Assembly: GCA_024704765.1 (NCBI GenBank) | Contig: JAKMXF010000332.1 | Location: 218,619 to 282,618, forward strand | Direction: 5' to 3' | Length of the DNA: 64,000 nt | Origin: Oopsacas minuta | Taxonomy: Eukaryota; Animalia; Porifera | Part shown: positions 35,471-44,700 of the stretch, one piece after another | Position numbering within the stretch: the stretch's first letter is position 1 | Layout of the letters: every line of letters starts with the position of its first letter | The notes under the pieces: generated by a model | Databases searched by the model: none | What the model saw: the letters and a program-made list of their open reading frames with translations, nothing else | What the model was told of the DNA's origin: nothing | Program-made: the position numbers and the translations under genes

Positions 35471-35949
35471 GACAAGATTATAGTATAGATACAACAAGAG
35501 AGGTCAACTGGTAACACACATTTCAAGACTATGCAAGGATCATATAATCTTATAATCTGATGTATTCTGTGAATTTTGATCAATGTTTTCGTATTTATTG
35601 AACTGAATATCAATTCACCAATAAATAAAACTATATTTAGATTCACAAATCATTTCATATTACATCAAACAGTAGATATTGCAGTAATCTAAATGCGTTA
35701 CTATAGTTAGAATTGATTAGAATGTTTCATTAAATTGGTGTGCTTAGTACTGTTGCGTAGGATTTTGACCCGCGTAGGATTTTGACCCGCAAGTAGCAAT
35801 TGCAAATCAAGTAATATCAACATTTCATCCCTAGTCATATAGTATTCGTATTTATAAATGTGTGACTTCCTAAATGCACACACTAACATTTTACTTTGTT
35901 TCTAGATTTCAACATCAAACACTTATATTTACTTTTGGCATTTTTCATT

Positions 35950-38900
35950 ATGGATGCGACAGAGCATGAAGCAATTCGTGGATACCTCCAGACGAATATT
36001 ATCCCACCAGAAATCAAGAGTGATCGCTACAGAAAGAAGAATTTTGTCAGAAAGTGCAAGGGGATTTACTTTCAAGAGAATAAGCTAATGAAGGTATATT
36101 CCTGAATGATATTTTTGATTTATACATATTTCCAAGACATAATTAGAAATCTTGAGGTAACTACATATCTGCGAGGAGGCAGATATGTAGATGCCTCATT
36201 AAATTTGCGTACAATAGGGAGATGAGAAGGGCGAAAACGCTAGGGGGCTCCTCTGCCCCTCAATGCTACCTATAACCTCTGCGTTTAACTAGAATAATTT
36301 TCTTGTAGATTTTCAGAAAGAAGAATGGCTGTGTGAAATACTTGGAGATTCCACTAGTCTCAGAAATTGACAACATTATCGGATTCTATCACAATGTCAC
36401 TCATCCTGGAATCAACACTACCATTGATGGAATCCGAAACAAATATGATTGGAATGGTATATACAATGATGTTGGATCCTACGTGAGTTACTAAATTACG
36501 TATTTCTTTCATATATGATTTTCCAAGAAAATGTGGCTGAGAACACAGACTTACCAACCCTCCAGGGATACCTGGATTACAAATTTTGAAATCCAGGGAT
36601 TTAGCAACGATAATCCAGGGAAATTTGCAAAAGGGGTTGGTAAGTCTGAGAACAGGATGTATTTTATAGTTTGAGGTTATTCACCTTGTAATTATTCTAC
36701 TGTATACACCTTTATTTGTGCGATCTGATGATATTTAGTATACCGGTATACAATTTTATCATATGGAAATCTATTTGTGCGGTACAACCAACCAATCATG
36801 TATCTAACAACTAATGATCCTTGCGGTAGTTAGTAATTGGGATAGGTAGTGGGAGTATTTCACATAAACATATTTGCCAACCTGAGTGAAGAAAAAGCGG
36901 GACGGAATGCTAATTTAGTGGGACATCTGGGACGTAGCAAATTACATTAGACTGGACTGCAAACTGACAATTAAATCATTTCCCGTTCTAGATCCGAACT
37001 TGCCATGACTGTCAAACCTCTGCTGCTCTACCTCCTCAGCCACAACGAGAGCTTCAACCTATTCCTCCTCCTGAAGAACCATGGTGTCATTGTGGAATTG
37101 ATCTCATATGTAATATGTCTCGCACTGTACTTGGATTTCAGCACATTCTTGTCATCGTGTGCTACCTGAGTAAATTTGTAATTGCCCGACCACTCAAGAC
37201 TAAAACATCTAAAGAAATATTGGATTGTTTACAGGAAATTTATCTCTCATTCGGTGTGCCTAACATCCTCCAACATGATCAGGGAACAGAATTCTCAAGC
37301 AAGGTAACTCATATTTTTACATACTCGAGATTAGTAATTGTAAATACACCAAGTAAATTATTCCTGATACACAATGCGACTTACTATATTGGATATACGT
37401 ACGTAACAAGTTGCATTGTCAATTGTCAACGCATTGCTTCAATATATACCCTGGTAGGAAATTATGCGTCCTGATGGCCATATTTAAGAAACCGTGTGGA
37501 AAATTGGATTTTAATTTATGTTAAATACTAATAAATAAGAATTTACGAATTGATGCTACTAACTTCGGGAGGAAAATATACCTTATTAATCGTTTTATCT
37601 TTCTTACTATTGTTGTACAAGACTAAATACATGCGCGTAGTAGATTGTCATTGTTCTCTTATTTACTTTCAAAATAGGAATTTCAGGAATTTCACAAGAA
37701 GATAAATATCAACACCAGAAGAACCACAGCATACCACCCACAAAGTAACGGACTTGTTGAGTCACACAACAAAATATTGAAAACGTGAGTATTGATGCTA
37801 AATATAAATGTATACCTATTCTAAGCCTTACATACGTTTAATACACGTCGTTTATAATTAGATAGCTTTGAATCAATTTAACACTTTTTACAAATAGAAA
37901 AATCAACAAGATGCAATCTGATGGGGACACTGAATGGACAGAGAAATTACAGACAGCAGTACTAGCAGCAAATACTCAAACCAAAATCTCTACAAGCTAC
38001 ACACCCTTCTATCTCATGTTTGGGAGAGACTTTGATTCATCTAACCTTCTCAATCTTATCACTTCTCCAACTAACCCCGGATTACTAACCGAAGCTGATA
38101 TCTCAGAGGCAGAAGTATCAGAAGATGAGAATATTCAAATGGATGCAAACGAACCACGCCCATTTGACTTTCCTATAATTGATAACGAATGGATAGAAAA
38201 TCTTTCTTCCACACGTAAAGCTGACAGGATGACTGCTATTGAAAACATCAAGGCTGGTCAGAAAGTTCAAAAGAAAACATATGACAGCAAAGTTAAACAC
38301 AACAGGTAAGCAATAACGAAACACATTCTTGTTGTGATGTAACATGTTGGAATTTCATACATCATCTCTTACTAAATTCAATTAAATTCACTGACTGTTG
38401 TATAATCAGGTAAATATGAAATAGTCTTGAATCGGAACTAATTTATTGTTTCCTCAATTATATGAATTCTTAAATTCCAAAACACTTACTTTTAGTTATA
38501 AAATTAGCATCATTACAAACTGTACGTAATTGGCACATTATTTTCTTTGTATAATCATAGTGTAAACTTTAGATCAGAATTTGTGGAAGGAGATGAGGTA
38601 CTTGTACATAATATAAAGAAAGCCAAGCGACTCCCAGGAACAAAAGATGCAAAGAAATATTTGGGACCATATACGATAGAGGAAGTTAAACCAAGCCACC
38701 TAATTGCTCGCAAAGACCCAGATAGCAAAACAACAAAACTACCTATCCATCTATCACGAAAATATCATTCTCGCATGAACGAAAAACGGCAGGTTCGAAC
38801 GAAGACAGGCAAATCAAAGAAGCCCAAAAGATCTTGCAAATTCCCTTCTAGCGGTAAATATATTAGCGAGACAATATTGTACTGAACTATAACTAATTGA

Positions 38901-40259
38901 CTCAGCCCATGATTAAGTACATATAAACTAGTTGTGTTCTGTATTGATTCGATTAATACGTAATAGCAATCCTACATTTCACATATTTATTTGTATTTAG
39001 ATTCTTTGGATGATATATTGAACCTGGATACCATGGAAGAAACATTTGAAACACCGCAACAACACTCAATCTATGAAAATATCGATTCTGAGCTACTTCA
39101 ATTGAAACCTCGAATACTATCAGCTCTTGTCAATAACACATACTTAACCCAACTACATGAGAAACTCGCTACAAAAGCTGCATCTCTAACTTCATTGAAT
39201 TTACTATATTCTTACCATCCACCCAACGAACTAAATTTTGAGATTAAGGAGAAACTTGCTGTATCAGCCGGTAATTGGTACGCAGAATATCGTTCCTCCT
39301 ATCCTACTGAAATACCTGAAGAGACACGAAGAGATCTTGACTATCCGATTGCTGTTCTATTACCAGTAATAATTGAGTTAATATTCACAACTGAGCAAGT
39401 TCATGAGATCATTGAAATACCAGAACAATCTATACAAAATGCATCAGATCTTATCCCATATCCTAAATGGGGAGGAGAGTATAACAACATCGTGCAATCT
39501 AACACCTGTTCTATCGACAATATATTGGCTATTCTTAGTTCGAATAAAGCAACCATCATAGACTCACTGAAGTTAATCGGAAGTACACATATTGAAGCTG
39601 AATTCCACTACATATTCCAATTGGCTGCTAATTGTGAATTTGAGAAACTTCGAGAATATGTTGCTACTAAAATTGGGCTTGAAGTTATTTATGATTCCTC
39701 AGGATTGATACGGTCTTATGATTTCTTTGGATCAGAGGGTAACATCATCAAATATTTACGAACAGAAGATTTGTGTAACGACAAATATTTCACTATCTTC
39801 CAATGCCACCAATGCACCAATATCTTTGAGACACAATCCATGATTAGTAATATAGGAGGCGTTATTACAAACCTGGAATCATCTGTTAATCGAAGTCTCG
39901 TTCCTATTAAATGCAAGTCTTGTGGATCAACTACTGCTGTCTTAGAGAGGATATCTGGTCAATTCAAGTCAATACCTGTCATGCTAACAATTGAAATCGG
40001 ACATCTACCCGAATTGCCAGACATTTTTGCAAGTGATATTGACAAACACTTTACCATCAGTCACAACCAACGGACACTTCACTACCAACTTGCTGGCTTT
40101 AGCATATTGAGTAATAGACACTTTTATTCAATCCTTTACCAAAACGGGCAATTCTATAAATATGACGGAATGAGAGAACCAATTATCCAACTTTGGGACT
40201 GTGACACTTTCATCGGATCACTCAATACTGTATTCTACCTCTTGCACTCTTCTGACTAA
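35950..40259 (+). CDS. Seven-exon Ginger transposase (H2C2, D(35)E, GPY) fused to a USP-like cysteine-protease domain; 894 aa
   Basis: Exons are 35950-36093, 36309-36482, 36992-37303, 37678-37784, 37898-38305, 38573-38853 and 39001-40259 (2685 nt). All introns are GT-AG and phase-consistent (0,0,0,2,2,1). Motifs are HNVTHPG..TCHDC, GIDL, QHDQG-35aa-VES and YLGPY. The last exon has SNTCSIDNIL, CHQC/CKSC and YQLAG..RHFYS..FYKYDG. Confidence 0.9.
36546..36648. mobile_element. 103-bp MITE in Ginger intron 2
   Basis: 15-bp TIR CAGACTTACCAACCC / GGGTTGGTAAGTCTG, flanked by duplicated AGAACA. Confidence 0.75.
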
Positions 40260-41445
40260 TTCTTAGCGATTCACGACTCTTTTCCATCATTCGAAAGCGC
40301 TCAAAGGCAAGGTACATCGAACCTTGTGGGGACCTCTGCCCGAGGTTATTCAGGCAACGCAATCCCTATCATGGTGAGCCCAGATAATGGAAACGCGACC
40401 TGCAACAGCACATCCCCAGTGGCGAATATCATCACTCTACCATCTAAGTATATTGCGAGAAAGGCAGCGCAACTGACGAGTCTACGCCGAGACGAAATAC
40501 AGCATGGAATCAGATACAAGCGAGTTTCTTATCTATTTTTTATTTTTTAATGTCTCCTTGTCTGTGGCCGTTCGGGGTCCGTTAGCTCCTCGCCTGTCTG
40601 TTAAATTACGATTTATTGTACGTATTCGTTTATGTTGCAGCTTAGAATCGAATTTGGTGTGATCGCAATCACATCAAACTCGCTCCAACACTGCACAAAT
40701 AAACAAGGTGAGGTTAACGTTAGACGTTTAGCGTTAGGGGGTGGCTGTAAGGGGAAGGAGGAGGCCACCGCAGCTGACTTGTTTTGTTTATAGAAATCTA
40801 GTGTTTTCCAGGAGTATGCAGCGTGCCAGAGGCTCGCGGTTTTCACCTCAACTCTATATGTGTATCAACATTATACCAAGACTCCGTAACAAATGCATAG
40901 TCTACGCTTGTCCAATAGATGAACATATTTCAGTGGTATATTCCTTAAAGCTTGTTAAGAAGTATAGAGAAATGGGTAAAGATGAAATCGCCTACAATTC
41001 GTACTTAAGATATTCCGAATATTCATTATCATGCTAATGCTTGTAAAATTTTTGTTATTTGATAGAATATATTGCATTATATAGATTGACATGTTAAATT
41101 ATATTATTTATTATGAGTTACTAAACACAATTATCAAATACCTACCACCTCCTGTCCAAGTAATATTAATATAAAATATTTATATACGTATACTGTCCAT
41201 TTTTGGCATTTTGGATGATTATACATATTGTAAATTTGTAATATGTAGTGGGAACATAGTTTACATGTTATCAAACAAATTCACCACTTTCTAGAATCCA
41301 ACTCTAAATTGACTTATTTATTCAGTTACGTATAAGTATAGCTAGTCTAAAGTTGAATTACATTACGTACATTTAGTGGTAATTACGTAATGAAAGTGTA
41401 TGGAATTCGAAAAAGTCAAATGAAAGAGAAGTAAGATTACTTTAG

Positions 41446-41710
41446 AGTCAAAATCGTATGACAATAATACATTATATGCGGGTCAGAATCCTACGACAAT
41501 AATACATTATATGCGGGTCAAAATCCTACGACAATAATATATTATATGCGGGTCAAAATCCTACGGCTGTAATAGGTGTAATACATTTTGATGCGGGTCA
41601 AAATCCTACGCATATATTACATCGTAGGATTTTGACCCGCACCATGGATATGCTATTAGGATTTTGTATTGCGGGTCAAAATCCTACGCGGGTCAAAATC
41701 CTACGCAACA
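41446..41710. repeat. Subterminal array of the 18-bp GCGGGTCAAAATCCTACG motif at the Ginger right end
   Basis: Copies at 41478, 41513, 41548 (35-bp period) and 41593, an inverted copy at 41623-41640, and two overlapping copies within the TIR. Confidence 0.92.
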
Positions 41711-44700
41711 GTACAAATCTAATAGAGACTCGATTCTAACAAGCCAGTTTTCAAATGTAAATATCTCAAAAAGTTTTGCTTATTTTACCATAATATTTTA
41801 AACACATAAACGCCCATACAGCAGGAATACATGCCCATGATTTCAGGAAAAAGTAATTTAAGTATACTAAATTCATATGTGAACTATACTGGTGAGATAC
41901 ACCAATTTCTATTAGAAAAAATGAAAGTTTATAAAATATAAATATATTTTCAGAAATCTCCGTATCTCTTCTTTCGAATGGCCTAATAATATTTACATTC
42001 TGACTATGGGAAGTTGGTCAAATTAATGGTTGAAGTACTGTTAGTCGAATATTCAGCCAACTTCACACTCGTCACACCTTGCATGTATATACTTTCGAAT
42101 TTCTGCTTCAAGTGCTCGAGTGTAACTGCTGTTCTCAATAGTTGGAAAGTATTTGTCCTAAAAGATGCAGGTTAGCTGACATTTTGTTCGAAAAATTAAT
42201 GTTTATTAGAAGTAATAGACTACACATGTAATCGTTGCACGTTGATAGTAGTAAAGATAATCTTGTTTTCAATCTTTGTGTTACTGTAAGTGATGTATGG
42301 AGCTTCGGTTTGTACAAATGATGTACTCATTATCCAACAACCTGTGATATGCCTTTACACCAATTGCATTTGTTTCAACCTTCCAGCTGAGCTGTGATAA
42401 TAATAGTATAACATTTATAGTAATCGTAATCGTAGTCGCTTAACAATTATAGGTTATAATCGTAGTCGTAATCGTAACCGCTTAATAATTTTAGGTATTA
42501 ACCAAAAGGCCCCAACCCTTTCTTGCTAGCCCCGAATCTTAGCGCTAGGACCGCTAATTTTCTTTACAAATTTGTAATTACTTCTATTTCTGTTGTTTCT
42601 TTTAGTTCTTTATTTAAATTATGAGGAGTCTATTGGGACCACCTTTTCTCAATTTCCAGTTTTCTATTGCTCCTTCCGCTATGGTTGTATGTGGAACTAT
42701 TCATGACTTGTCTGTTATTTCCTACCAATCATTATCTCCCTTCTTCTCAACCCTTTTCTCTCAAGAAGATTGGGTTGATGCTATCCTAACACTTTCACAA
42801 TGCTCAATTGATTATCTCTTTTGTAAAATGCATAGGATTCTTATATTACTGCTTCCAAGTGATAGCAGTCGACACAACTCTCCCTCACGCCCTGATCATC
42901 TTACTAAACAACTTTCTTTGACATCACAAATCGTAAATACAGAGTCTTTAAATATCCTCCTTGTAACTAATAAGATATTCACATTTCCTCTCTCTGCTGC
43001 TATTTCCAAAGCTTTTTCATTGTTTTCTATGAAAACTAATCCAAAACACTTTAAGGAAATATTCGTTGATTTCTGTCTAACTGAATCTGACAAAGAGATG
43101 CTATTTGAGGATAGACGATCTCTTACTTACCTTTCTGATGGAATACGAAGGGCTCAGCTCATTGTAGATTCCCCGGCCAATATGATGGACACTGATGGAT
43201 TTTTCCGCCAAATCAAACAGGTATTCTTCATTTGTATCTTATTGGTGCAACTGTAGTATTTACCACCCGAATCTTTAAAAACTCGTCAATCGAGAATTTT
43301 ATCGCTCTTTTATAGTACTCGTTGAATGAGAAATACCTGCAACCGACATACAATTATACCCTGAAATGGTATTATAAATCATTCTATAATTCTATTCAAC
43401 ACTTCTATACTTATCTGAATCACGTTCATACTTTTGTAAGAACTCATCTAGTCACCCTGATTATACTTAGATTTACTGTTCCGACTATACTATACTATAG
43501 TGTACCAGTATTGAAATCAATCAAACTACTGGGTATATTTTTCTCTATTATTTTATTTTTTATCAATTCTACTGCCAAAACTAGCTGGAATCAAGGTGTT
43601 ATATGATATTTTGTATATTTTAGTTATTCTTTGGGTATGCTTTTCCACTTAGCTTATCGATCCGACACTAAGTGCTACAGTTTGACACCAGTCAAACTTT
43701 TCTCTGGCGTCTATCTAAAATATTGAGCGTTAAAGTCCCATCAAATTTCTTCATTTGAAGTTGTGGTTCACTAATCAAAATATATTTCTAACTAATAGTT
43801 TGTTACTAAAATACATGATTTTTTTCGTTTAATAGTACTATTTTATTGTTGGTTGTTGTTAAATGATGAATTTGTTGAACAATTTGTTATTGTCATGAAC
43901 TCTGAATAGAATAACTCCGAACGGATTAAGGCTAGAATAGTATATTTTTGCAACGCTCCAAACAGTGAACTTAATTTCACAGATTATCCTGTTCACATTT
44001 TCGATCTTATTCCATTCCGTGGTATTCCAGTGGCGATTATTATCTGTCGCATTTCAGTAGTGGAAAAGTTGCAATCAGACCTATTTAGGTAACCCCAATA
44101 AGGAGTCGGATAAATGTAGCGTATGTTTTCATTGAATTTCCAATTTTACAACACCAACTGTTATTGATATTATATTTAGGAATTAAGACTGTATCATTTT
44201 TAAAATATTTGTTTTACTGTTTCATGGGATGATTTAATTTTTGTCAATGATTCGCAAAATTGCTATTAGATGTGTGAACTTAGGGAATTCCCACCATAGT
44301 CAGTAGGTAGCAAAGATCATATTGTAGACGCACAGTAATCGGCCATATTATTGTGGCAAGAAAGCAAACCGTGCTAAACATCCTTTTCAAGGTATACAAA
44401 AAGCCCATGGAGACTGTTTCGAATTGCTTCATCTTACCCGCTTTGCTGTCAAGATATTAGGCTGAATTCTGGACAGCATTAAATCAAGGGAGAACGGATG
44501 TTATTCTTTTGGCTTATCAGGGTAATCAATTTACAAAGTCTGGACGAAAATGGGAAATGTATCCAAACTGGCTGAAACGAATTGCAAATCAGTAGAATTA
44601 ACTTGTAGATTGCATGGTTCAGCACCTAATACTTTGGGTAAATATTCAAAGAATTACATGTGTAGCACAATTTTAGAGTTGTCAACTTCTTTAAGTTACC

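What the first reader, a model, noticed from the sequence alone, without database searches (positions are those of the whole stretch)
35751..41710. Intact, intron-containing Ginger transposon whose transposase is fused to a USP-like deubiquitinase fold
Seen in sequence: perfect 42-bp TIRs, a GTAC TSD, and seven exons that splice in phase to an uninterrupted 894-aa ORF with H2C2, D(35)E and GPY motifs. The 419-codon last exon has a Cys box (QSNTCSIDNILAIL), two CxxC pairs positioned like a USP fingers zinc site (CHQC, CKSC), a 'SIPVMLTIEI' strand, and a His box ending in an Asp (YQLAG..RHFYS..FYKYDG). Established: Ginger1 transposases are known to carry C-terminal Ulp1, OTU or PHD domains. Inference: I do not know of a reported USP/C19-like fusion, so this could be an undescribed, possibly active transposase-deubiquitinase that counters ubiquitin-linked silencing or turnover. 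Almost everything else in the window is decayed, so this element is probably young.
Basis: partly seen in the sequence, partly recalled or inferred. Interest (0 to 1): 0.9.

Follow-up and report, generated by a model that had tools for sequence, protein, structure and literature searches.

The report
Sponge Ginger transposon with USP-fold protease
An intact, expressed cut-and-paste "Ginger" transposon of the glass sponge Oopsacas minuta encodes an integrase-type transposase whose tail is a very divergent ubiquitin-specific-protease (USP) fold, where published Ginger elements carry OTU or Ulp1 proteases, and its 3' untranslated region holds a conserved hammerhead ribozyme motif.

Summary
Window 35751-41710 is a complete element with perfect 42-bp inverted ends (TGTTG...CAACA), a GTAC target duplication, and seven GT-AG exons giving an open 894-aa frame. 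All six junctions appear in an RNA-like public run, which moves the exon 6 start to 38573. The N-terminal half is a Gypsy-like integrase with H2C2, D143/D202/E238 and GPY.

The integrase-plus-USP layout recurs in at least two deep lineages. An OTU-bearing Ginger from the same genome nests among them on the integrase tree, so the protease module has been swapped. The nearest structural relatives are vertebrate C14orf28/DRIP1 and the C-terminus of the Drosophila FB-NOF protein.

I rate this a new variant of a known kind. Protease activity and substrate are untested.

I also found a type III hammerhead motif about 190 nt past the stop codon, with covariation in all three stems, behind an unexplained ultraconserved 140-nt block.

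This scan had already noted both features on other copies in this genome.

The parts
35747..35750 (.). Left target-site duplication, GTAC
   Evidence: Same 4 bases follow the right end. Other copies have GGCC, GCTC, GAGC, GGGC and GCGC/GCAC, giving a GNNC consensus.
35751..35792 (+). 5' terminal inverted repeat, 42 bp. It starts TGTTG and holds two tandem 17-18-nt units.
   Evidence: 42/42 complementary to 41669-41710. The 18-nt unit occurs 9 times in the window, all inside this element, against 0.01 expected by chance.
35950..36093 (+). Exon 1 (aa 1-48)
   Evidence: ATG start and GT donor. In X1, the contig overhang at 36093 reads the start of exon 2.
36309..36482 (+). Exon 2 (aa 49-106). Holds the first half of the H2C2 zinc-binding domain (H76, H80).
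   Evidence: Pfam Integrase_H2C2, E 3e-6. GT..AG joint 36482/36992 in X1.
36992..37303 (+). Exon 3 (aa 107-210). Holds C110/C113 and the integrase core with D143 (37100-37102) and D202 (37277-37279).
   Evidence: Pfam rve, E 2e-6 on the exon and 3e-10 on the near-identical P0004. Residue positions.
37678..37784 (+). Exon 4 (aa 211-246). Holds catalytic E238 (37759-37761).
   Evidence: Pfam rve_3, weak. 35 residues lie between D202 and E238. Joint 37784/37898 in X1.
37898..38305 (+). Exon 5 (aa 246-382)
   Evidence: In phase. Joint 38305/38573 in three X1 contigs.
38573..38853 (+). Exon 6 (aa 382-476). Holds the GPY motif (38664-38672) and a basic stretch that may be a nuclear localisation signal. 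The start is corrected from 38561.
   Evidence: RNA joint. The corrected reading matches the deposited proteins P0004 and P0012.
39001..40259 (+). Exon 7 (aa 476-894 plus stop). A helical region (aa ~477-620) is followed by the USP-fold domain.
   Evidence: Joint 38853/39001 in X1. 24 homologues in the word-indexed search and 200 in the exhaustive profile search. dN/dS 0.26 against the L001 lineage.
39441..40256 (+). USP-fold cysteine-protease-like domain (aa 623-894). Candidate Cys645 (39507-39509), His849 (40119-40121) and Asp864 (40164-40166). Zinc cysteines 744, 747, 780 and 783.
   Evidence: Model pLDDT 93.5, pTM 0.89. Foldseek and VIA-align hits are USPs. TM 0.76 to the C14orf28 cluster. 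Residue conservation.
40290..40432 (+). Ultraconserved non-coding block in the 3' UTR, function unknown
   Evidence: The ~260-nt block with the hammerhead is 80-86% identical between lineages, against 74% for the coding exon in the closest of them. No 3-base periodicity and no shared ORF. Does not fold better than shuffles, z -0.43.
40448..40502 (+). Type III hammerhead ribozyme motif. Predicted cleavage after A40452.
   Evidence: Full-length match to Rfam RF00008, but only 19 bits. Complete core. Each of the three stems has a change on both sides, 97.4% of cells are paired against 18-58% when slid. Found only at the homologous site in 257 kb.
41478..41640 (.). Subterminal copies of the 18-nt end motif, in both orientations. 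Probable transposase binding sites.
   Evidence: L001 has a longer array at the same place.
41669..41710 (-). 3' terminal inverted repeat, 42 bp
41711..41714 (.). Right target-site duplication, GTAC

Best explanation
This is an autonomous Ginger1-type cut-and-paste DNA transposon of Oopsacas minuta.

Shown:
- A spliced 894-aa transposase with H2C2 zinc domain, DDE integrase core, GPY module, basic linker, helical region and a C-terminal USP-fold domain.
- The USP-fold domain has a conserved Cys/His/Asp set and a four-cysteine zinc ribbon.
- TG...CA inverted ends carry repeated 18-nt motifs.
- Duplications are 4 bp, at GNNC targets.
- The family is transcribed and spliced.
- The protease exon is under purifying selection.

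Inferred:
- The integrase part binds the repeated end motifs, cuts at the TG/CA ends and inserts with a 4-bp stagger.
- The USP-fold tail is an active isopeptidase for ubiquitin or a ubiquitin-like modifier. It would act on the transposase itself or on chromatin and repair factors at the transposition site. OTU or Ulp1 modules are thought to fill this role in other Gingers.
- The hammerhead in the 3' UTR cuts the transcript about 190 nt past the stop codon. This would set or limit the transposase mRNA.
For: Anatomy.

Integrase domains.

Splicing and expression: run X1 has 10- to 100-fold deeper exons than introns, and GT..AG joints that the three DNA-like runs lack.

Mobility: six further copies at 93-96% identity, with different 4-bp duplications.

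USP fold:
- Model pLDDT 93.5.
- 400 Foldseek PDB hits at E<=1e-3.
- UCH-family clusters at TM 0.59-0.65 and C14orf28 at 0.76.
- Language-model features also point to UCH.

Candidate catalytic residues:
- Cys 33/35, His 34/36, Asp/Asn 30/31.
- The Cys sits at a helix N-terminus.
- The His opens a strand.
- The Asp follows the next strand, 15 residues on.

Selection: dN/dS 0.25 for the USP part.

Same architecture in L001 and L008-L014.

Module exchange:
- The OTU-like Ginger P0172 is sister to the window-type clade (100*).
- All eight Ginger rows form one clade (98.6*).
- USP-only monophyly is rejected (p-AU 0.004).
Against: - No sequence-level match to Pfam UCH or to any solved USP for this protein. 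Only 2 of 60 relatives touch UCH (E 0.035) and 1 touches Peptidase_C98 (E 0.002).
- Triad geometry could not be measured.
- Pseudo-USPs such as PAN2 are among the structural hits.
- The target duplication (GNNC) differs from the CCGG/CCGT of described Ginger1.
- No reference Ginger1 sequence was available for the tree.
- The exon 6/7 joint rests on one contig. Transcripts may come from other copies.
- The clade test was named after seeing the tree.
- The hammerhead scores far below Rfam's threshold, and contigs cannot show cleavage.
Confidence: 0.75

Rival explanations
1. The USP-fold tail keeps the fold but does not cleave. It would serve as a ubiquitin- or SUMO-binding or protein-docking module, as in PAN2 or other pseudo-USPs. 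It would tether the transposase to modified chromatin rather than remove the modifier.
For: PAN2 pseudo-hydrolase structures are among the good matches. There is no sequence-level UCH match. The oxyanion-hole position is not clearly conserved: Q at C-4 in only 18 of 34 sequences.
Against: Cys, His and Asp/Asn are kept in 94-97% of sequences that cover them, across 21-67% identity. Inactive USPs usually lose these residues. dN/dS is 0.25.
Confidence: 0.15
2. The protease works in cis or on element-encoded protein, not on host conjugates. It would cut the 894-aa product into an integrase and a tail, as the USP-fold papain-like proteases of some RNA viruses process polyproteins.
For: USP-fold viral proteases often combine polyprotein processing with deubiquitination (general knowledge; discussed for viral DUBs in PMC9741609). 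A long linker and a helical region separate the integrase from the USP part.
Against: No ubiquitin-like C-terminal motif (such as LRGG) is visible in the linker. The conserved WGG lies inside the domain's first strands. Nothing here tests it.
Confidence: 0.07
3. The last exon is not really part of the transposase. It would be a separate gene or a nested element that gene models and my splicing join by accident.
For: The exon 6/7 joint is carried by a single contig. Many database proteins hold the last exon alone.
Against: - The joint is GT..AG and in phase.
- Deposited models P0004 and P0012 read through it.
- Order, strand and spacing are kept in eight other loci, in at least two deep lineages.
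- The whole unit lies between one pair of inverted ends with one duplication.
Confidence: 0.03

Closest known systems
Ginger1 DNA transposons (Bao, Kapitonov & Jurka 2010, PMC2836005)
   Same: Inverted ends of about 40 bp starting TGTNR. 4-bp duplication. Gypsy-like integrase with H2C2, DDE and GPY. Several GT-AG introns. A C-terminal papain-superfamily protease for ubiquitin-like modifiers.
   Different: The protease is a USP fold, not OTU or Ulp1. Targets are GNNC, not CCGG/CCGT. The host is a hexactinellid sponge, whereas the 2010 paper found Ginger1 in four animal species, none a sponge. A hammerhead motif lies in the 3' UTR.
OTU-bearing Ginger of the same genome (P0172, LOD99_3154)
   Same: The integrase is 45% identical over 424 residues. 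It is sister to the window-type clade on the integrase tree.
   Different: The C-terminal ~280 residues do not align. They look OTU-like: Pfam OTU E 0.074, and OTU or otubain clusters by language-model features and by shape.
Vertebrate C14orf28 / DRIP1 (Q4W4Y0)
   Same: Best structural match: TM 0.76, rmsd 3.6 A over 255 residues in the ESM Atlas, and the best Swiss-Prot AlphaFold hit at 19% identity. PMC10318531 already classifies it as a USP-like deubiquitinase domain.
   Different: It is a single-copy host gene with no integrase. No sequence-level link was shown here. Its function is unknown.
Drosophila FB-NOF 120.7 kDa protein (P16320) and SWIM-type proteins in AlphaFold DB
   Same: Large transposon-type proteins whose last ~260 residues match this model (TM 0.41-0.62, rmsd 5-6 A).
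   Different: From my own recollection, NOF belongs to a different transposase superfamily (Mutator-like), not the integrase type. That was not tested here. I found no paper describing these tails.
Canonical USP deubiquitinases (MEROPS C19; USP30, USP46, USP12, USP1, USPL1)
   Same: Fingers-palm-thumb fold, Cys box and His box order, His-to-Asp spacing of 15, and a four-cysteine zinc ribbon.
   Different: 9-16% identity and no HMM match. A compact 272-residue domain. Substrate unknown: ubiquitin, or SUMO as for USPL1.
Type III hammerhead ribozymes (Rfam RF00008; plant LTR retrozymes, viroids)
   Same: Complete catalytic core, three stems with stem III open, and loops on stems I and II.
   Different: It lies in the 3' UTR of a cut-and-paste DNA transposon of an animal. 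Described animal hammerheads are mostly type I, in Penelope-like elements and retrozymes.

Membership tests
Ginger1 | Terminal inverted repeats of about 40-270 bp beginning TGTNR | tested here: met
   42-bp perfect repeats beginning TGTTG.
Ginger1 | 4-bp target-site duplication | tested here: met
   GTAC here. Four other loci have matching 4-bp pairs, and a fifth (L001) differs at one base.
Ginger1 | CCGG or CCGT target specificity | tested here: not met
   All seven duplications fit GNNC and none is CCGG or CCGT.
Ginger1 | Gypsy-like integrase with H2C2 zinc finger and DDE core, and no reverse transcriptase in the element | tested here: met
   Pfam Integrase_H2C2 and rve. The other exons match no retro-element family.
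Ginger1 | GPY/F motif after the core | tested here: met
   LGPYT at aa 412-416, aligned with IGPMT in P0172. By inspection only, with no profile.
Ginger1 | YPYY motif just upstream of the zinc finger | tested here: inconclusive
   Aromatic residues and a proline are present in aa 30-75, but no reference alignment was available.
Ginger1 | Groups with reference Ginger1 transposases on an integrase tree | not tested
   No Repbase references were at hand. It does form a clade with an OTU-bearing Ginger-like protein, apart from 53 mostly Gypsy-type integrases (98.6*).
Ginger1 | C-terminal OTU or Ulp1 (with or without PHD) domain | tested here: not met
   The tail is a USP fold.
GingerRoot / Ginger2 | 6-bp duplication, TA...TA ends and no H2C2/GPY (GingerRoot). 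AT-rich RTATAY target and no GPY (Ginger2). | tested here: not met
   4-bp GNNC duplication, TG...CA ends, H2C2 and GPY present, compared with PMC6839031 and PMC2836005.
USP / peptidase C19 | USP catalytic-domain fold | tested here: met
USP / peptidase C19 | Cys box and His box with Cys, His and Asp/Asn | tested here: met
   Cys 33/35, His 34/36 and Asp/Asn 30/31 of sequences covering them. Positions in the secondary structure fit.
USP / peptidase C19 | Triad residues within catalytic distance | not testable with these tools
   Model coordinates are not returned.
USP / peptidase C19 | Match to Pfam UCH/UCH_1 above threshold | tested here: not met
   No hit for the window protein. Weak hits in 2 of 60 relatives.
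USP / peptidase C19 | Isopeptidase activity | not testable with these tools
   Needs a biochemical assay.
Hammerhead ribozyme, type III | Conserved core (CUGANGA, GAAA, UH cleavage site) and three helices | tested here: met
   The core is invariant in the nine distinct copies aligned. 13 pairs are 97.4% paired, with one double change per helix.
Hammerhead ribozyme, type III | Rfam gathering score | tested here: not met
   19 bits against 48.5.
Hammerhead ribozyme, type III | Self-cleavage | not testable with these tools
   Only assembled contigs were available.

The most novel reading that the evidence does not exclude
The compact USP-fold domain of this sponge Ginger, the tail of the Drosophila FB-NOF protein, the tails of SWIM-type transposase-like proteins and vertebrate C14orf28/DRIP1 may be one transposon-borne USP subfamily. 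If so, the uncharacterised human gene C14orf28 would be a domesticated transposon deubiquitinase. Integrase-type transposons would be seen to exchange OTU, Ulp1 and USP modules freely because any of them supplies the same needed activity.
Probability: 0.25. Interest if true: 0.7.

Novelty: new variant of a known kind. Interest (0 to 1): 0.55.

Why it matters
Transposons of several superfamilies carry proteases for ubiquitin-like modifiers: OTU, Ulp1 and VTD. No one has shown what these proteases do.

This is a third, unrelated-by-sequence protease class on the same integrase chassis. It is kept under selection, and it has been swapped with OTU within one clade. That argues the activity, not the particular fold, is what transposition needs.

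An intact, expressed copy gives a concrete construct to test this, comparing wild type with Cys645Ala.

The structural link to C14orf28 offers a lead on an uncharacterised human protein.

The conserved hammerhead, if active, would be, as far as my searches show, the first self-cleaving ribozyme described in a cut-and-paste DNA transposon's mRNA.

Tried and rejected
- Sequence searches of the last exon against Pfam and PDB, with a single sequence and with a 20-sequence profile, found nothing beyond zinc-ribbon noise.
- The first whole-exon model was mediocre (pLDDT 73). I replaced it with a domain model built on 60 sequences.
- My first acceptor for exon 6 (38561) was wrong.
- GingerRoot and Ginger2 were excluded by end sequence, duplication length and motifs.
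- I first took L012 to read straight through the exon 6/7 boundary. Translation shows in-frame stops, so an intron is there too and this is not evidence of a continuous ORF.
- The conserved block after the stop codon is not coding: no periodicity and no shared ORF. It is not a tRNA. It matches no Rfam family. It does not fold better than shuffles.
- The hammerhead's minimum-free-energy fold is not the ribozyme fold and is not significant. The case rests on the core and on covariation.
- The deep Ginger-USP lineages L008-L010 lack both the block and the hammerhead.
- The source species of the ENA assemblies could not be learned.
- Text searches for Ginger-USP, for NOF with a peptidase, and for a hammerhead in a DNA transposon found no prior report.

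Full report
**The element**

Window 35751-41710 is bounded by two 42-nt arms that are perfectly complementary. They begin TGTTG and end CAACA. GTAC lies directly outside both ends.

Each arm is two tandem copies of a 17-18-nt unit. The 18-nt unit occurs nine times in the 64-kb window, against 0.01 expected by chance. All nine lie in the two arms or in a subterminal cluster at 41478-41640.

Between the arms, seven exons with GT-AG borders give a single open frame. My first model used an acceptor at 38561 and gave 898 aa.

**Splicing and expression**

I laid the contigs of four public runs on the element. Three runs cover it evenly, like DNA. Run X1 has exons 10- to 100-fold deeper than introns. 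It alone shows GT..AG joints, at 36482/36992, 37784/37898, 38305/38573 and 38853/39001. It also has overhanging contig ends that read across introns 1 and 3.

Exon 6 therefore starts at 38573.

- The run's type is not on record, so I infer it is RNA from this behaviour.
- The exon 6/7 joint rests on one contig.
- At several exon positions the dominant letters in all runs differ from this copy.
- So the family is shown to be expressed, but this copy is not.

**Host and copies**

The closest database proteins are hypothetical proteins of the glass sponge Oopsacas minuta, assembly GCA_024704765.1.

Six other copies fetched from that assembly are 93-96% identical over the whole element, introns and 3' region included. 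All six are broken, by one premature stop, by frameshifts or by truncation. A joint from 36481 to 40959 in two runs shows an internally deleted derivative.

Duplications at other insertions are:

| Locus | Duplication |
|---|---|
| L002 | GGCC |
| L006 | GCTC |
| L011 | GGCC |
| L012 | GAGC |
| L014 | GGGC |
| L001 | GCGC/GCAC |

The element makes 4-bp duplications at GNNC.

**The transposase half**

Pfam finds Integrase_H2C2 and rve. The residues are H76, H80, C110 and C113, then D143, D202 and E238, with 35 residues between the last two. GPY is at 413-415. There is no reverse transcriptase or RNase H.

Against the definition of Ginger1 in Bao et al. 2010 (PMC2836005), these features are met: arm length, TGTNR ends, the 4-bp duplication, H2C2, DDE, GPY and introns. 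The CCGG/CCGT target and the OTU/Ulp1 tail are not met. The YPYY motif could not be judged. GingerRoot and Ginger2 are excluded.

**The tail**

The 418-aa product of the last exon has no Pfam or PDB match by sequence, even as a profile.

A model of the whole exon was mediocre (pLDDT 73), but its hits were already all USPs. An exhaustive profile search gave 200 relatives, mostly fragments. With 60 of them, the last 272 residues model at pLDDT 93.5 and pTM 0.89.

| Search | Result |
|---|---|
| Foldseek, PDB | 400 chains at E<=1e-3; the 50 listed are all USP-fold proteins |
| ESM Atlas | nearest cluster is vertebrate C14orf28 (TM 0.76, rmsd 3.6 A); then UCH-family clusters |
| AlphaFold Swiss-Prot | best hit is human C14orf28/DRIP1; residues 795-1056 of the Drosophila FB-NOF protein also match |
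| AlphaFold clusters | top hits are long uncharacterised proteins with this fold at their C-terminus, one of them SWIM-type |

A 2023 survey already classed C14orf28 as a USP-like deubiquitinase domain (PMC10318531).

**Candidate catalytic residues**

Across the 60 sequences (21-67% identity):

| Residue | Kept in |
|---|---|
| Cys645 | 33 of 35 covering sequences |
| His849 | 34 of 36 |
| Asp864 (or Asn) | 30 of 31 |
| Four zinc cysteines | 41-50 of about 55 |

In the model, the Cys sits at a helix N-terminus, the His opens a strand, and the Asp follows the next strand 15 residues later, as in USPs. Coordinates are not returned, so I could not measure the geometry.

Between the window copy and lineage L001, dS is about 1. 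dN/dS is 0.25 for the USP part and 0.28 for the helical part before it.

**Is the fusion old?**

The same order, integrase and then USP-like exon on one strand, is seen in:
- L001, L011, L012/L013 and L014 (47-61% identity in the last exon).
- L008, a second family in O. minuta at about 27%.
- L009 and L010.

The closest integrase outside the family is P0172 of O. minuta, at 45% identity. Its tail does not align and looks OTU-like.

On an integrase tree, P0172 is sister to the window-type USP clade (100*). L008 and L010 form another clade (99*). With six long rows removed, all eight Ginger rows form one clade (98.6*) apart from 53 other, mostly Gypsy-type, integrases. Holding the seven USP-bearing rows together costs 43.5 log-likelihood units (p-AU 0.004). 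The group was named after the tree was seen, and the trees are quick searches. Read plainly, the protease module was exchanged within this clade.

**How it most likely works**

The anatomy, expression, mobility, fold and selection are shown. The rest is inferred.
- The integrase part binds the repeated end motifs, cuts at TG/CA and inserts with a 4-bp stagger.
- The tail removes ubiquitin or a ubiquitin-like modifier from the transposase or from chromatin and repair factors. This is the role proposed, and never tested, for OTU and Ulp1 in Ginger1 and for VTD and OTU in Helitrons (PMC9741609).
- The substrate cannot be named. SUMO-specific USPL1 is among the best matches, and one relative touches its Pfam family.
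- A non-catalytic binding module, or a self-processing protease, remain possible.

**An unexpected part**

The roughly 260 nt after the stop codon align at 86% between the window copy and L001, and at 80-82% with L011-L014. The coding exon is 74% identical between the window copy and L001, with dS about 1.

At 40448-40502 lies a complete type III hammerhead:
- stem III GUAU/AUAC, with cleavage after A40452;
- stem I UUGCG/CGCAA;
- core CUGACGA;
- stem II GUCU/AGAC;
- then GAAA.

Rfam's type III model matches end to end, but at only 19 bits. Across nine distinct copies the core is invariant. Of cells in the 13 pairs, 97.4% are paired, against 18-58% when the partners are slid. Each stem has a pair changed on both sides. 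A pattern scan and a covariance model find the motif only at the homologous site in 257 kb.

The 140-nt block before it (40290-40432) is nearly invariant. It is not coding, not a tRNA and not an Rfam family, and it is not significantly folded. I cannot explain it.

Contig ends at 40290 and very high DNA depth over 40328-40924 suggest this 3' module also occurs in other repeats.

Papers I could search place animal hammerheads, mostly type I, in Penelope-like elements and retrozymes. I found none in a cut-and-paste transposon.

**Novelty**

Published Ginger1 tails are OTU, Ulp1 and PHD. My searches found no Ginger-USP report.

The general theme is known. Bao et al. already cite a C19 peptidase on an IS5-like transposase. 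I therefore class the finding as a new variant of a known kind.

This scan's own notes show that other readers, and two follow-up agents, reached the same reading on other copies in this genome. They also show that the hammerhead was noted there. I found the hammerhead before looking those notes up.

Noticed in passing
window 40448-40502: Complete type III hammerhead ribozyme motif about 190 nt past the transposase stop codon. It is conserved in five lineages, with a compensatory change in each stem. It falls below Rfam's threshold, and cleavage is untested.
   Followed up: yes
window 40290-40432: A 140-nt non-coding block just after the stop codon is more conserved between lineages than the coding sequence. 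No known RNA family, no significant fold, no ORF.
   Followed up: partly
window 40290 onward; 40328-40924: Contigs of DNA-like and RNA-like runs diverge just before 40290. DNA depth is several-fold higher over 40328-40924. So the 3' module seems shared with other, more numerous repeats.
   Followed up: no
window 36481 joined to 40959: Contigs in two runs skip 4477 bases, with six other letters at the joint. This is an internally deleted, non-autonomous derivative of the element.
   Followed up: no
window 36539-36648 (minus strand), inside intron 2: A hairpin-forming stretch gives a weak mir-584-like Rfam match (26 bits against 80). It is probably a small inverted-repeat insertion, not a microRNA.
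   Followed up: no
L008:5203-8646: A second, compact Ginger-USP family in O. minuta. It has about 199-bp inverted ends. The integrase and USP-like genes are adjacent, at about 27% identity to the window protein. It has no hammerhead.
   Followed up: partly
L007:3075-5369 (protein P0173): A deposited gene model named 'PEP-CTERM domain protein' joins NHL repeats to the first exons of a Ginger copy. This is probably an annotation chimera.
   Followed up: no
L005/L006:1-1048 and 4738 onward: An inverted partial copy of the element's 5' kilobase carries the same flank as the full copy 3.7 kb away. It is either a local inverted duplication or an assembly artefact.
   Followed up: no
AlphaFold DB hits: USP-like tails are seen on the Drosophila FB-NOF 120.7 kDa protein, on a SWIM-type protein, on a GCM-domain protein and on several aphid and wasp proteins. 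I found no paper describing them.
   Followed up: no
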